NCBI GenBank assembly: GCA_025786725.1
Contig: JAHLTZ010000028.1
Span: 248,001 to 312,000, forward strand
Source of the DNA: Syncephalis fuscata S228
Taxonomy: Eukaryota; Fungi; Zoopagomycota
Direction of reading: 5' to 3'
Length of the DNA: 64,000 bases
Shown here: positions 5,091 to 49,155 of the stretch, one piece after another
Layout of the letters: the number at the start of each line of letters is the position of its first letter
Numbering within the stretch: position 1 is the stretch's first letter
The notes under the pieces: generated by a model
Database searches by the model: none
What the model saw: the letters and a program-made list of their open reading frames with translations, nothing else
What the model was told of the DNA's origin: nothing
Position numbers and translations under genes: made by a program

Positions 5091-6225
5091 TAGGGGCCAA
5101 ATGACTATTTTTAATAACATTCGCGCAATTGAACTACACATTTGTTCTATTGGACATGGGGCCAAGTGGTGAGTTTTATTTAATCACTACATCATCACAT
5201 TTAGTGTGATTTGGGGTCAAATGACTAGCATTTGCATACTTGAACTGCGCATTCGTTCTATTAAACATGATGATGGGTGGTGAATAACATTAAAGTTTAA
5301 ACTACTCATTATTGTAGATTTATTATCAATATGCATATACTCAGTACACGTACATATTTTATTCACCTATATCATTCCCATTCTGTTCCACACTAATATA
5401 TACCGTTCTATAATACACTAGACCCATTTTATTGTTTATATGTTCCAATATACTCTATTCATTCTCCTCATTGCATTATATGCACTATAACTTTAACATC
5501 GTTTTATATGCTTTCTTACCATATATTTATTATTTTATGTATCATTCTATACTCGCCTAGCTTTCCTCTATCCAGTGCTATTTTTATTTTTGTTCTAGCA
5601 CTATTATTAATAAATGCCGACTAATGTCGGTCATTGCTTATGCATATATGCTCAATAACTTCGACACAGCTAATCGTCGCTCAATACTGTATATTCGCCA
5701 TATTGTTTTGTTGTTTTATTGTCTAATAGCTACGTGCTATCTATTGCAGCTGTCCTTTTGGTTCTAGCTGTATTATTGATAGAGTTCAACTAATCTCGCT
5801 TGTCAATCTATATACTCAGTAACTTCAACACAGCTAATCGTCACTTTAGTCTATATATATTTATAATATTCTATTGCTTTATTATGTAAAAGCGGTGAGC
5901 TGTACAGAAACGTTGTCCGTTTGGCTCTAGATACATTAATAGTAAAGTTCAATTTATTTCGCTTATTGTGTTCATTAAACTATACTTATTTAAAGCTATA
6001 TCCAATATAATGTATTCAATATGATATAAATAATATGCAATAGTGTACGATAGAATGGGAATAATATAGGTAAATAGAGTATATATGCATACTGGATAAT
6101 GAATCTACAATGATGAGTATTTGATGACTGATGTCACTCACCACCCATCATCTTGTTCAATAGAACAAATGTACAGTTTAAGTATGTAAATGCTAGTCAT
6201 TTGACCCTTAAATCATAATAAATGC
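5091..6225. mobile_element. Dispersed repeat family A, fold-back (MITE-like) copy with ~190-200 bp inverted arms
   Basis: About 5198-5400 is the reverse complement of about 6040-6225 (GGGTCAAATGACTAGCATTT...GATGATGGGTGGTGA...). 5100-5676 also aligns in direct orientation with 46801-47371. No ORF. Confidence 0.7.
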
Positions 6226-46178: not shown

Positions 46179-46800
46179 TCATGGCAATAATCCAACCTGT
46201 CATTGTTTATTCTCTTTGCATCAGTTGGTTACCAGTTCCACATTTGTTTGCGTACTATTATTCATTTTTGCGCCTATTAATTATAACTGTTTGTTATTAT
46301 GCTACCATTCTATCTATACAGATACTATCCAACAGATGGCAATCCCATGCCATTTAATAATTATATTAATACCAATCATCTAGAATTAAAAATAAATAAC
46401 ATATTGCTTAGTAACAATTACCCAATCGGCTATTGGTACAAAGCTATTATAGAATAAAACACTTATTGCAACTAATTGTTTATTGTTGGTAGTGTCAACA
46501 ATCTAATTACAACGTATATGATGCATTGTAAAATGGCGTACTGAATACTTGACTTTTATCTACTAATTATCGCTGCCTTATGATCGTCACCTATTCTATT
46601 ACACACTGACAATATTACAGCATCTACAACTTTACTATGATCATATTTATAAGTGCAATAGCTATATTTATATAGATGCTATACTATGATATTAAAACGA
46701 CAAACTGTTCAGAGTATTAAAGTAGTAGCTATATTTTATTATTTATTATATTACACTAATATTTAACAAGATATTAACAAATTATTAACATTGAGAGTTC

Positions 46801-47371
46801 AATGGCTATTTTTAATAACATTCGCGCAATTGAACTACACATTTAATCTATTGAACATGGGCACAAGTGGTGAGTTTTATTTAATCATCACATCATCACA
46901 TTTATTGTTTGTTTGGTGGTCAAATAACTAAATTTAATAATATCCAACCTATTAAACATGATGATAAGCGGTGAGTGACATCAGTCATCCAATACTCAAC
47001 ATTATAGATTCGTTATCCAATATGCATATATTCAGTACACATATATATATTTTATTTACCTATATCATTCCTATACTATTCCACACCATTGTATCCCATT
47101 CTATGACATACTAGGCACATTCTATTCTTTATATGTTCCAATATACTGTACTCATTCCCCTTATTGCATTATACACACTATAACTCTAGCATCGTTTTAT
47201 ATGCTTTATCACCATACATTTATTATTCTATATATCATTTTATAATCGGCTAGTCTTCCTCTATCTAAAACTGTTTTTACTTTTGTTCTAGCTTTATTAT
47301 TGACAAATTTCGACTAATGTCAGTCATCTGCTCATTAGACTATATGCCCAATAACTTCAACACGGCTAATC
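46801..47371 (+). repeat. Repeat family A copy (~570 bp)
   Basis: Colinear with 5100-5676 (CTATTTTTAATAACATTCGCGCAATTGAACTACACATTT ... CAATAACTTCRACACRGCTAATC). Confidence 0.8.
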
Positions 47372-48234
47372 ACATACCTTTGCTGTCTACTCATTCTATT
47401 ATCTATCGTTTCATTATTATACAATAACCACACGCTATTTAGCTTTGCTAGCGTCAGTGCAATGATGGTGATGGCAGTTGCACTCATCTCTATATAGCAC
47501 AGACTATATGCGCCACACTTACTCATATTCTAACACTTTCATTACTTTTACCCACCACACTTTTCTTTCTATTTCTTATTGCAATCTGTATTCTTTATTC
47601 TTTACACTCCACATACAGTTATAATGGTAAGTAGACTTCACTATATGCGCGTCACACTTGGGTCTGTCTTTCTATTGTTCGTATCGTCATGTTTGCTTAC
47701 TTGTCTTGTTCTTATTGTCACTATGAATGCTATCATATTGGTTATCGTTATAGCCTGTATGTATGCTAGTCATCTACAACATATAACTTCTTAATGCTGC
47801 ATCTGCCCATCATTTAATGCGCTGCGTTACTTTGTCATCTGTTACAGCTAATGAATAACAGTATGTATATATGCACAGTATATGCATATACTGTTCTTTT
47901 ACTATTGAATAGTAATCGTATTCTATAGCTGCATATATATATTGTACTGCACCATTTGCATATGCTTTTATTGCTATTTACTGATTGATTGGTATGGTCC
48001 TTTATTGTATCAATAGTGATAGTAGATTATATGCATATACTACTATAATTACTGTATGTTTATTTATTTATGCGTACTGCATATATATATCGATTGCTAT
48101 TATTTGTGTGTATGCGCTTTATTTGTTGTATAATGCGATATTGGCGACGTGTACACTGCCAAAGGACAAAAATTGCAGCAAGCTTCTACGTAATTGGAAA
48201 TTACGAACGAGTTGCAAAAAACTGCCTTCACTTC

Positions 48235-48353
48235 AACTACGTTCATTGCGCCTAGAAAGCACCGGATCCCGTCCGATCTCCGAAGTTAAGTTAGGCCGCG
48301 CTTCTGTAGTACTGCGGTGGGGGACCACGCGGGAATGAGAAGTAATGTAGTTT
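48235..48353 (+). rRNA. 5S rRNA: 5S rRNA gene (119 nt), dispersed
   Basis: Helix I AACTACGTT/AATGTAGTT; CCGGATCCCGTCCGATCTCCGAAGTTAAG; TAGTACTGCGGTGGGGGACCACGCGGGAAT. Confidence 0.95.
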
Positions 48354-48360
48354 AAACAAA

Positions 48361-48432
48361 TCCGCATTCGTCTAGTGGTTAGGATATGGCGCTCTCACCG
48401 CCAGGGCCGGGGTTCAATTCCCCGATGCGGAA
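48361..48432 (+). tRNA. tRNA-Glu(CTC): tRNA-Glu (anticodon CTC), intronless
   Basis: Acceptor stem TCCGCAT/ATGCGGA, A-box GTCTAGTGG, anticodon stem TGGCG/CGCCA with CTC at 48394-48396, B-box GGTTCAATTCC. Confidence 0.96.
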
Positions 48433-48437
48433 TTTTT
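48433..48437 (+). terminator. RNA polymerase III terminator (T5)
   Basis: TTTTT directly after the tRNA discriminator base. It is the first T run of 4 or more after the 5S start. Confidence 0.85.
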
Positions 48438-49155
48438 GCTCCAGTTTACTCTTATTTTTGCCAATGTATATTGCTTTTTGCTGCTGTGGATAGTTGCGCG
48501 AGGCGGGAGCTACTCCAGCCGTTGTTTTTTGCTTAAAAAAGCGTTGATTTTAGTTTGTATATTGCTAATTAGCTGTGTGGTCATTTTTGTAATTTAACGC
48601 GTATTGTATTATGTAAATAAATATTTATCAATAAATTATTCATGTGTACTCAAATGCATTGAATAGTTATAGTAATGATATAGTAGGTGTTTGTGATTGT
48701 ATTTTTTATTTGCTATTGTAGATAGTATCATATAAAGACAGTGGGCAGTGTATATGTGTATGCGCATATGATATATGCACGTATACTGGCTAATAAATAT
48801 ATATAGTCGTTTTTATTCAATAGACTTACTAGCCTGTCATTAAAGTTGGTTTATTTACTCATATATGCATAGTAATAATGAATACATGTTATAGAAATTA
48901 TTTGTATAAATATATGAGTACTATTTAATTAAACAGATGTATATAGTACATGCATGTCCACTAACTAATAAATAGAATACTAGTTGCTTTTATGAAATAA
49001 TTTTATTGGTTTGCATTATAATCGAATTATTTATTGATATATGTATAATGATAATGAATACATGCTATAGAATTATTGTATAAACATATAGGTATTTTTT
49101 ATTAAACAAATATTTTAAACGGCCTATGAATATATGTGTAGTCATTGTTTTGCAA

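What the first reader, a model, noticed from the sequence alone, without database searches (positions are those of the whole stretch)
48235..48437. Dicistronic 5S rRNA - tRNA-Glu Pol III unit with the 5S gene first
Seen: an intact 119-nt 5S gene ends in only TTT, is followed by a 7-nt spacer AAACAAA, then a perfect tRNA-Glu(CTC) and T5. It stands alone with no other rDNA in the window. Established: Pol III needs about 4-5 or more T residues to terminate; RNase P cuts at tRNA 5' ends; Yarrowia lipolytica has tRNA-5S fusions in the opposite order that make 5S synthesis TFIIIA-independent. Inference: a 5S-tRNA precursor is made from the 5S promoter, the spacer serves as an RNase P leader that releases the 5S 3' end, and the tRNA B-box may help recruit TFIIIC. 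This would be a distinct route for 5S biogenesis.
Basis: partly seen in the sequence, partly recalled or inferred. Interest (0 to 1): 0.8.

Follow-up and report, generated by a model that had tools for sequence, protein, structure and literature searches.

The report
Every 5S gene runs into tRNA
In this fungal genome all 22 genes for the small ribosomal RNA (5S) lack a stop signal and run, after 5-7 bases, into a tRNA gene, so the two RNAs are probably made as one piece and cut apart, in the reverse order of the one described natural case; the joint RNA has not been seen.

Summary

It is not a one-off. All 22 5S genes in the 29.4-Mb assembly have a same-strand tRNA 5-7 nt downstream: Gly-GCC 7, Asp-GTC 5, Ile-AAT 4, Glu-CTC 3, Lys-CTT 3. 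No T run longer than 3 lies between 5S +1 and the tRNA end. A T4-T6 run starts 0-4 nt after every tRNA. In a control set, 77 of 78 environmental 5S genes carry T4 or more at their 3' end.

Four of the five tRNA species exist only as 5S-linked genes, so the units must be expressed.

Supporting points:
- A shared upstream block precedes the 5S.
- A Ty3/gypsy element sits at -3..+1 of one 5S copy.
- A 10-finger TFIIIA-like gene is present.
- Contigs from two other organisms show the same 5S-spacer-tRNA-Glu junction.

No RNA evidence for the joint precursor could be obtained, so co-transcription remains inferred.

I class it as a new variant of dicistronic Pol III genes, 5S-led instead of tRNA-led. 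Only engineered 5S-tRNA-sgRNA cassettes were found as precedent. This scan has already reported other copies from this genome.

The parts
48180..48234 (+). Upstream block shared by most 5S-tRNA units (about -55..-1): TTyTACGTAA .. GAAATTACGAAyGA .. TGCAAAAAACTGCCTyCAyTTC. It is a candidate upstream promoter or TFIIIB site for initiation at 5S +1.
   Evidence: MAFFT alignment of 15 non-redundant units. Mean pairwise column identity is 0.83 at -20..-1 and 0.70 at -40..-21, against 0.34-0.69 further upstream. The block is shared by units with different tRNAs. It is degenerate in L007 and displaced by a retrotransposon in L010.
48235..48353 (+). 5S rRNA gene, 119 nt, ending GTAGTTT with no T4 or longer run.
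   Evidence: Rfam RF00001, 106.2 bits, full length. It is identical at all 119 positions to 11 other copies; 7 more differ only at position 119. Helix I pairs positions 1-9 with 110-118 in the fold of the whole unit.
48354..48360 (+). 7-nt spacer AAACAAA. It is the predicted 5' leader of the tRNA and 3' trailer of the 5S, and is unpaired in the predicted precursor.
   Evidence: Sequence and fold. Spacers are 5-7 nt in all 22 units and none holds a T run. The spacer differs by substitutions in organism B and by a CC insertion in organism C, while the flanking genes stay adjacent.
48361..48432 (+). tRNA-Glu(CTC) gene, one of only three copies in the genome, all three 5S-linked.
   Evidence: ARAGORN, Rfam RF00005 58.8 bits, own-genome DNA search 3 of 3 copies at 5S units.
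48433..48437 (+). T5 run followed by GC: the first Pol III terminator-like signal of the unit.
   Evidence: Sequence. In all 22 units a T4-T6 run starts 0-4 nt after the tRNA, mostly followed by GC. The two stand-alone tRNA-Lys genes I could read end the same way.
48455..48459 (+). Second T5 run (backup terminator).
   Evidence: Sequence. Second T runs also follow in the Gly, Asp and other Glu units.

Best explanation
The unit is a natural two-gene RNA polymerase III transcription unit led by the 5S gene.

Proposed mechanism:
1. Pol III starts at 5S +1. Initiation is directed by the 5S internal control region (TFIIIA, then TFIIIC and TFIIIB) together with the shared upstream block.
2. Pol III finds no T4 or longer run at the 5S end, reads through the 5-7-nt spacer and the tRNA, and terminates at the T4-T6 run just behind the tRNA.
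3. RNase P cuts at the tRNA 5' end. This releases a 5S with a 6-8-nt 3' trailer, which 3' exonucleases trim much as they trim ordinary pre-5S.
4. The tRNA 3' trailer is removed and CCA is added.

All 22 5S genes of the genome, and all gene copies of four major tRNA species, are expressed this way. That would couple 5S and these tRNAs one to one.

Shown here: the gene layout, its universality in this genome, the absence or presence of T runs, and the junction in two other organisms. Inferred: the joint transcript, the processing steps and the factor dependence.
For: - Universality: 22 of 22 5S genes, by Rfam and by DNA search, have a same-strand tRNA 5-7 nt downstream.
- Terminators: the longest T run from 5S +1 to the tRNA 3' end is 3 (15 units) or 2 (7 units: 4 Asp, 3 Lys). 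A T4-T6 run starts 0-4 nt after each tRNA.
- Control: 77 of 78 complete environmental eukaryotic 5S genes have T4 or more within 10 nt of the 5S 3' end.
- The tRNAs are needed: Glu-CTC 3/3, Gly-GCC 7/7, Asp-GTC 5/5 and Ile-AAT 4/4 copies are 5S-linked. Lys-CTT has 3 linked copies plus 1 stand-alone.
- Upstream context: the two stand-alone tRNA-Lys genes I could read (CTT in L045, TTT in L046) have an AT-rich upstream region and T4 or T6 followed by GC. The linked tRNAs have the G+C-rich 5S where TFIIIB would have to sit.
- The shared upstream block precedes the 5S whatever the tRNA.
- A 5.3-kb Ty3/gypsy element with identical LTRs is inserted with target duplication TTCA at -3..+1 of the 5S in L010. 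L007 is the empty site. Known Ty3-type elements integrate at Pol III start sites (PMC5911963).
- Contigs of organisms B and C join the 5S 3' part, a diverged 7-9-nt spacer, tRNA-Glu and CCTTTTTGC.
- In the predicted precursor the 5S and the tRNA acceptor and T arms fold as separate domains and the spacer stays unpaired.
- Engineered 5S gene-tRNA-Gly-sgRNA cassettes work in several fungi, so this order can be transcribed and processed (PMC8542335; PMC8542773).
- In known tandem Pol III genes the upstream gene's promoter drives the unit (PMC2566860).
Against: - No RNA evidence. The one run of the same organism (X1) behaves as DNA: its unique upstream flank is covered, and the 5S unitig is about 22 times deeper than that flank. 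The soil RNA contigs show only a related 5S 3' end with an A tail.
- T3 is one short of the T4 this genome appears to use as a terminator, so partial termination at the 15 T3 units cannot be excluded.
- The retrotransposon argument rests on one insertion. The only other copy of its LTR (C75, target duplication ATAA) is not beside any recognisable Pol III gene.
- Upstream conservation is only moderately above the background of a repeated 0.7-1.4-kb flank.
- Six pairs of loci are 98-99.6% identical over 3 kb, so there are nearer 16 than 22 independent loci.
Confidence: 0.75

Rival explanations
1. There are two tightly packed but independent Pol III genes. The 5S transcript ends at or near the TT(T) by weak or non-canonical termination. 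The tRNA is initiated separately in the spacer or the 5S 3' end from its own A and B boxes.
For: The tRNAs have intact internal promoters (Rfam 58-68 bits). 15 of 22 units have T3, one short of the T4 seen behind several tRNAs here. Non-canonical Pol III termination is documented in human cells (PMC3141230, abstract seen).
Against: Seven units have only TT followed by C or A. TFIIIB for the tRNA would have to bind the G+C-rich 5S box C region, which TFIIIA and TFIIIC must occupy for 5S synthesis. The upstream gene dominates in studied tandem Pol III genes (PMC2566860). The stand-alone tRNA-Lys genes have AT-rich upstream DNA instead. A 5-7-nt spacing kept at 22 of 22 loci, and in two other organisms, is hard to explain without a functional link.
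Confidence: 0.12
2. The transcript is dicistronic, but the promoter is composite. TFIIIC is recruited mainly through the tRNA B box (with A-box-like sequence in the 5S and the upstream block setting the start), so 5S synthesis is TFIIIA-independent or only TFIIIA-assisted.
For: Every 5S gene has a B box at a fixed distance of about 175-180 nt from +1. In Yarrowia, fusion to a tRNA made TFIIIA dispensable (PMC2566860). A strong shared upstream block exists.
Against: A 9+1-finger TFIIIA-like gene is present and looks intact. It lies in L051, G000:C317, about 562,100-563,870. Its finger 4-5 exon hits Xenopus TFIIIA residues 107-160 at E 3.3e-19, about seven orders of magnitude better than the next protein. 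The 5S sequence is a canonical full-length match.
Confidence: 0.1
3. The layout is an artefact or consists of dead copies: an assembly chimera, or pseudogenes spread by a mobile element.
For: The units lie in repeat-rich DNA and share 0.7-1.4 kb of upstream homology. One copy (L022) has two 1-nt deletions in the 5S.
Against: These are the only 5S genes and the only genes for four essential tRNAs. 19 of 22 5S copies are identical apart from position 119. Independent read sets of three organisms contain the junction.
Confidence: 0.02

Closest known systems
[quoted passage not shown] 2008, PMC2566860); probably also Trichomonascus vanleenenianus, where all 5S genes are in tandem with tRNA genes (PMC13130702)
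   Same: Dispersed 5S genes are joined head to tail to a tRNA gene by a few nucleotides, with no terminator between. The same tRNA species recur: Gly-GCC, Asp-GTC, Glu-CTC, Lys-CTT. Release by tRNA-processing enzymes is proposed in both.
   Different: The order is reversed: there the tRNA leads and its type-2 promoter drives the unit, making TFIIIA dispensable. Here the 5S leads, so the type-1 promoter and an upstream block must drive it, and RNase P rather than RNase Z would separate the two RNAs. In Yarrowia 48 of 108 5S genes are fused; here 22 of 22. Acker et al. state that the leader gene is a tRNA in all known cases. In the passages of the Trichomonascus paper that I read, the gene order is not stated explicitly.
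Engineered 5S rRNA-tRNA(Gly)-sgRNA expression cassettes in fungi (Humicola insolens PMC8542335; Rhodotorula toruloides and others, PMC8542773)
   Same: A 5S gene with its upstream region is followed directly by a tRNA. Pol III reads through, and RNase P and RNase Z cut out the tRNA.
   Different: These are synthetic constructs with a third cargo RNA. No natural genome was reported to use this order.
Tandem tRNA-tRNA genes (S. pombe Ser-Met, hemiascomycetes) and plant tRNA-Gly(GCC)-snoRNA genes
   Same: They are Pol III dicistrons in which the upstream gene's promoter drives both genes and the tRNA processing enzymes separate the products (PMC2566860).
   Different: The leader is always a tRNA, and no 5S is involved.
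Bacterial and plastid rRNA operons with distal tRNA genes after the 5S (for example E. coli rrn; PMC5179076 listed)
   Same: The 5S is followed by a tRNA in one transcript, and RNase P contributes to separation.
   Different: These are bacterial-type operons with a bacterial-type polymerase. The similarity is an analogy only.

Membership tests
5S rRNA (Rfam RF00001) | Full-length match to the covariance model above the gathering score | tested here: met
   106.2 bits against 38, model positions 1-120. 22 copies in the genome score 88.9-106.3 bits.
tRNA (Rfam RF00005 / ARAGORN) | Cloverleaf with anticodon, above the gathering score | tested here: met
   58.8 bits against 29, Glu anticodon CTC. 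All 22 downstream partners are called by ARAGORN.
Dicistronic Pol III genes (co-transcribed tandem small-RNA genes) | Two Pol III-type genes head to tail on one strand, a few nucleotides apart | tested here: met
   5-7 nt in 22 of 22 units.
Dicistronic Pol III genes (co-transcribed tandem small-RNA genes) | No Pol III terminator between the genes; terminator after the second gene | tested here: met
   The longest T run inside the units is 2-3, and T4-T6 follows 0-4 nt after the tRNA. Control: 77 of 78 environmental 5S genes have T4 or more at their end.
Dicistronic Pol III genes (co-transcribed tandem small-RNA genes) | A single primary transcript spanning both genes (RT-PCR, northern, in vitro transcription) | tested here: inconclusive
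   The one sequencing-run search and the one read-laying run gave no RNA data set of this organism. X1 behaves as DNA, and the soil RNA contigs do not cross the junction.
Yarrowia-type tRNA-5S fusion | The tRNA is the leader gene and the 5S lies 3' of it | tested here: not met
   The 5S is 5' of the tRNA in all 22 units, and no tRNA lies within 1.5 kb upstream of any 5S.
Yarrowia-type tRNA-5S fusion | 5S synthesis independent of TFIIIA | not testable with these tools
   A 9+1-finger TFIIIA-like gene is present. Whether the unit depends on it needs genetics or biochemistry.
Ty3/gypsy LTR retrotransposons that target Pol III start sites (side finding, L030) | gag-PR-RT-RNase H-IN order, LTRs TG..CA, short target duplication | tested here: met
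   Pfam hits in that order on a 1503-aa ORF. LTRs of about 337 bp are 100% identical, with target duplication TTCA.
Ty3/gypsy LTR retrotransposons that target Pol III start sites (side finding, L030) | Insertions consistently within a few nt of Pol III start sites | tested here: inconclusive
   One insertion lies at -3..+1 of a 5S. The only other LTR copy (C75) has no recognisable Pol III gene beside it.

The most novel reading that the evidence does not exclude
A whole fungal lineage (this genome and at least two other organisms) makes all of its 5S rRNA as the leader of Pol III dicistrons whose second gene is one of five major tRNAs. This would be the first natural Pol III polycistron led by a type-1 (5S) promoter. 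5S 3'-end formation would be handed from transcription termination to RNase P, and ribosome and tRNA supply would be hard-wired one to one. The units give Gly 7 : Asp 5 : Ile 4 : Glu 3 : Lys 3 per 22 5S.
Probability: 0.7. Interest if true: 0.75.

Novelty: new variant of a known kind. Interest (0 to 1): 0.66.

Why it matters
Pol III genes are textbook single-gene units. The few natural dicistrons known are all led by a tRNA. A genome in which every 5S gene is the leader of a 5S-tRNA unit would show three things:
- A type-1 promoter can drive a polycistron in nature.
- Termination is dispensable for making the 5S 3' end.
- 5S and major tRNAs can be produced in fixed proportion.

It is also the mirror image of the Yarrowia solution and involves nearly the same tRNA species. 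That points to a recurrent evolutionary pressure, or an ease of fusion, linking 5S with tRNA Gly-GCC, Asp-GTC, Glu-CTC and Lys-CTT.

On the practical side, it is a natural version of the 5S-tRNA-guide RNA cassettes used for fungal genome editing. It also makes factor dependence (TFIIIA against TFIIIC B-box recruitment) directly testable on a natural template.

Tried and rejected
- RNA evidence. The single sequencing-run run and the single read-laying run gave no RNA run of the organism. X1 is labelled 'RNA?' but covers the untranscribed flank, and its 5S unitig is about 22 times deeper than that flank, as expected for DNA with 22 copies. I treat it as DNA.
- Organism identity. The look-up of encoding contigs with a 701-aa window ORF found nothing because own-genome records are withheld. 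The name Syncephalis fuscata comes only from earlier scan notes, and I did not verify it.
- Terminator statistics on many stand-alone tRNA genes. Only two stand-alone tRNA-Lys genes could be read.
- First zf-C2H2 search was too strict and was repeated at E <= 1.
- Metagenome scan for relatives. The 21-nt 5S motif turned out to be widely conserved, so the 80 loci are distant eukaryotes, not relatives. I used them as a control.
- A misreading, corrected. I first read six marine contigs with dense tRNA, 5S and snRNA gene arrays as further terminator-less 5S-to-tRNA cases. Reading across the Rfam boundary shows T4-T5 at their 5S ends, so that idea is rejected.
- Retrotransposon targeting. The second LTR copy is not beside a Pol III gene, so I downgraded this to suggestive.
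- Other RNA genes or ORFs in the conserved 1.4-kb upstream flank: none found.
- The TFIIIA candidate was searched exon by exon by reference.

Full report
**1. The observation**

- The window holds exactly two Rfam matches. One is a full-length 5S rRNA at 48235-48353 (+, 106.2 bits, model 1-120). The other is a tRNA at 48361-48432 (+, 58.8 bits), which ARAGORN calls tRNA-Glu(CTC).
- The sequence shows the 5S ending GTAGTTT, the spacer AAACAAA, and TTTTT immediately after the tRNA (48433-48437), with a second T5 at 48455-48459.

**2. Not a one-off**

- The window is G000:C201:248001-312000 of a 29.4-Mb, 371-contig assembly.
- An Rfam search of the whole genome finds 22 5S genes on many contigs. 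A DNA search with the window's 5S finds the same 22 and no others, with 22 of 22 candidates scored.
- ARAGORN finds a same-strand tRNA 5-7 nt downstream of every one: Gly-GCC 7, Asp-GTC 5, Ile-AAT 4, Glu-CTC 3, Lys-CTT 3.
- Nineteen 5S copies are identical except at position 119. That position is the unpaired 3' nucleotide and follows the tRNA class: U in most, C in four Asp units, A in the Lys units. Two copies carry one substitution, and L022 has two 1-nt deletions.
- Six pairs of loci are 98-99.6% identical over 3 kb, either haplotigs or recent duplications. Independent loci therefore number about 16.

**3. Terminators**

- From 5S +1 to the tRNA 3' end, the longest T run is 3 in 15 units and 2 in 7 units. 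A T4-T6 run, mostly followed by GC, starts 0-4 nt after every tRNA.
- The two stand-alone tRNA-Lys genes I could read end the same way, with T4 or T6 followed by GC.
- As a control I used 80 metagenome contigs that share a conserved 21-nt 5S motif. They are 75-84% identical to this 5S for the most part, so they are distant eukaryotes.
- In 77 of 78 complete cases a T4 or longer run starts within 10 nt of the 5S 3' end. An ordinary 5S gene carries its own terminator, and none of the 22 here does.

**4. The tRNAs are not decoration**

- DNA searches of the genome with each tRNA show that all copies of four species are the 5S-linked ones: Glu-CTC 3/3, Gly-GCC 7/7, Asp-GTC 5/5 and Ile-AAT 4/4.
- Lys-CTT has three linked copies and one stand-alone copy at C279. 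The weaker fifth hit is a tRNA-Lys(TTT).
- Four essential tRNA species, and all 5S rRNA, must therefore be expressed from these units.
- The stand-alone Lys genes have AT-rich DNA upstream. The linked tRNAs have the G+C-rich 3' half of the 5S there. That region includes the box C area that TFIIIA must bind, so separate initiation complexes for the two genes would compete for the same DNA.

**5. Where transcription probably starts**

- Units with different tRNAs share a block from about -55 to -1. Its consensus is TTyTACGTAA .. GAAATTACGAA .. TGCAAAAAACTGCCTyCAyTTC.
- Column identity rises to 0.83 in the last 20 nt. This is only moderately above background, because the units also share 0.7-1.4 kb of roughly 70% similar flank.
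- Homology between units of different tRNA class stops exactly at the 5S 3' end. tRNA plus downstream flank is class-specific. So a '5S plus upstream' module and a 'tRNA plus terminator' module have been combined repeatedly or homogenised separately.
- One unit (L010, contig C113) carries a 5.3-kb Ty3/gypsy element at C113:55074-60387.
  - Its LTRs of about 337 bp are 100% identical and have TG..CA ends.
  - Its 1503-aa ORF holds gag, protease, RT, RNase H and integrase in that order.
  - It is inserted with target duplication TTCA covering -3..+1 of the 5S.
  - L007 is the matching empty site.
- Ty3-type elements of yeasts integrate within a few nucleotides of Pol III start sites through TFIIIB (PMC5911963). 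This insertion therefore suggests an initiation complex at 5S +1.
- It is only one event. The other LTR copy, on C75 with target duplication ATAA, is not beside any recognisable Pol III gene.

**6. TFIIIA**

- A scan for C2H2 fingers shows one locus with seven or more fingers, at C317 about 562,300-563,360.
- Reading the frames of that locus (L051) shows an intron-split gene. It has nine tandem fingers, mostly of the C-x4-C type, then a spacer and a tenth finger. This is the architecture described for S. pombe TFIIIA (PMC2566860).
- I searched it exon by exon, without joining the exons.
  - The finger 4-5 exon hits Xenopus TFIIIA residues 107-160, in register, at E 3.3e-19. The next protein scores 1.7e-12.
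  - The finger 6-7 exon hits yeast TFIIIA best.
  - The finger 2-3 exon hits TFIIIA in register, but WT1 scores better.
- A TFIIIA-like factor is therefore very probably present. Nothing suggests the TFIIIA-independent route of Yarrowia.

**7. Other organisms**

- The run search listed runs of three coded organisms.
- Laying contigs shows that organism B has a 262-nt contig joining the 5S 3' part, a spacer with three substitutions, tRNA-Glu and CCTTTTTGC.
- Organism C has the same junction with a CC insertion in the spacer.
- The adjacency is thus kept while the spacer drifts.
- The run of the same organism (X1, labelled 'RNA?') covers the unique upstream flank. Its 5S unitig is about 22 times deeper than that flank, so I read it as DNA. 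This agrees loosely with 22 copies.
- Soil RNA contigs (X19) show only a related 5S 3' end with an A tail.
- No RNA evidence for the precursor exists in what I could reach.

**8. Mechanism**

- The best explanation is a 5S-led Pol III dicistron. I give it about 0.75.
  - Initiation is at 5S +1.
  - Pol III reads through the spacer and the tRNA.
  - It terminates at T4-T6 behind the tRNA.
  - RNase P cuts at the tRNA 5' end.
  - The 6-8-nt 5S trailer is trimmed exonucleolytically.
- The predicted precursor folds into separate 5S and tRNA domains with an unpaired spacer.
- Feasibility is shown by engineered 5S-tRNA(Gly)-sgRNA cassettes in several fungi.
- Rivals, with my estimates:
  - Independent transcription of two tightly packed genes, 0.12.
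  - A dicistron whose TFIIIC recruitment depends on the tRNA B box, 0.10.
  - An artefact or dead copies, 0.02.

**9. Comparison and novelty**

- The closest natural system is the tRNA-5S fusion of Yarrowia lipolytica. There 48 of 108 5S genes are fused and TFIIIA is dispensable.
- A 2026 report describes all 5S genes in tandem with tRNAs in Trichomonascus vanleenenianus.
- Acker et al. state that the leader is a tRNA in all known Pol III dicistrons.
- Full-text searches for 5S-first arrangements returned only engineered cassettes and bacterial or plastid operons.
- The partner tRNAs (Gly-GCC, Asp-GTC, Glu-CTC, Lys-CTT) are largely the same as in Yarrowia.
- I classify this as a new variant of a known kind.

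**10. Earlier notes of this scan**

- Other copies of the same unit in this genome have already been reported several times, with the same reading.
- Those notes name the organism as Syncephalis fuscata (Zoopagales; lineage). I could not verify the name.
  - the tRNA census (sole copies);
  - the retrotransposon at the 5S start with its empty site;
  - the TFIIIA-like gene;
  - the environmental terminator control.

Noticed in passing
L030:575-5888 (G000:C113:55074-60387): An apparently intact 5.3-kb Ty3/gypsy LTR retrotransposon. Its LTRs are 100% identical, and its 1503-aa gag-PR-RT-RH-IN ORF lies on the strand opposite to the 5S. It is inserted with target duplication TTCA at -3..+1 of a 5S gene, and locus L007 (C4) is the empty site. 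A solo LTR (90% identical, target duplication ATAA) lies at G000:C75:6875-7208, away from any recognisable Pol III gene.
   Followed up: yes
window 46800-47372; also window 5100-5675 with an inverted partial copy at 6035-6163: A dispersed repeat of about 570 bp, with at least 40 copies at 80-86% identity across the genome. A partial inverted copy of its first ~230 bp often lies a few hundred bases away, which looks like a foldback or MITE-type element. One copy sits about 860 bp upstream of the 5S of this window.
   Followed up: partly
L051 (G000:C317:561300-564500), gene at about 562,100-563,870: An intron-split gene with nine tandem C2H2 fingers, a spacer and a tenth finger. Its finger 4-5 exon matches Xenopus TFIIIA fingers 4-5 in register (E 3.3e-19). 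It is a probable TFIIIA.
   Followed up: partly
Loci L003/L004, L006/L008, L009/L021, L016/L022, L011/L020, L017/L018, and L007/L010 apart from the insertion: Pairs of 5S-tRNA loci on different contigs are 98-99.6% identical over the whole 3 kb held. The assembly may contain haplotigs, or the genome has very recent segmental duplications.
   Followed up: no
L022:1501-1617 (G000:C142:7950-8066): One 5S copy is 117 nt long with two single-base deletions (88.9 bits against about 106). It may be a decaying copy or a sequencing error. Its tRNA-Gly also differs by one base.
   Followed up: no
L061, L080, L085, L089, L093, L120 (marine metagenome contigs): Extremely dense arrays of tRNA genes together with 5S, U2, U4, U5, U6 and SRP RNA genes next to rDNA, in contigs of about 50% GC (picoalga-like). 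In L093 a tRNA-Arg lies 14 nt after the 5S, but the 5S genes there do end in T4-T5.
   Followed up: partly
window 48323-48360, as laid with run X19: Soil RNA-seq contigs carry the 3' end of a related 5S followed by a run of at least 14 A. This looks like an oligo- or polyadenylated 5S from another organism.
   Followed up: no
All 22 units (L001-L022): The tRNA species fused to 5S here (Gly-GCC, Asp-GTC, Glu-CTC, Lys-CTT, plus Ile-AAT) overlap strongly with those fused to 5S in Yarrowia lipolytica, although the gene order is opposite.
   Followed up: partly
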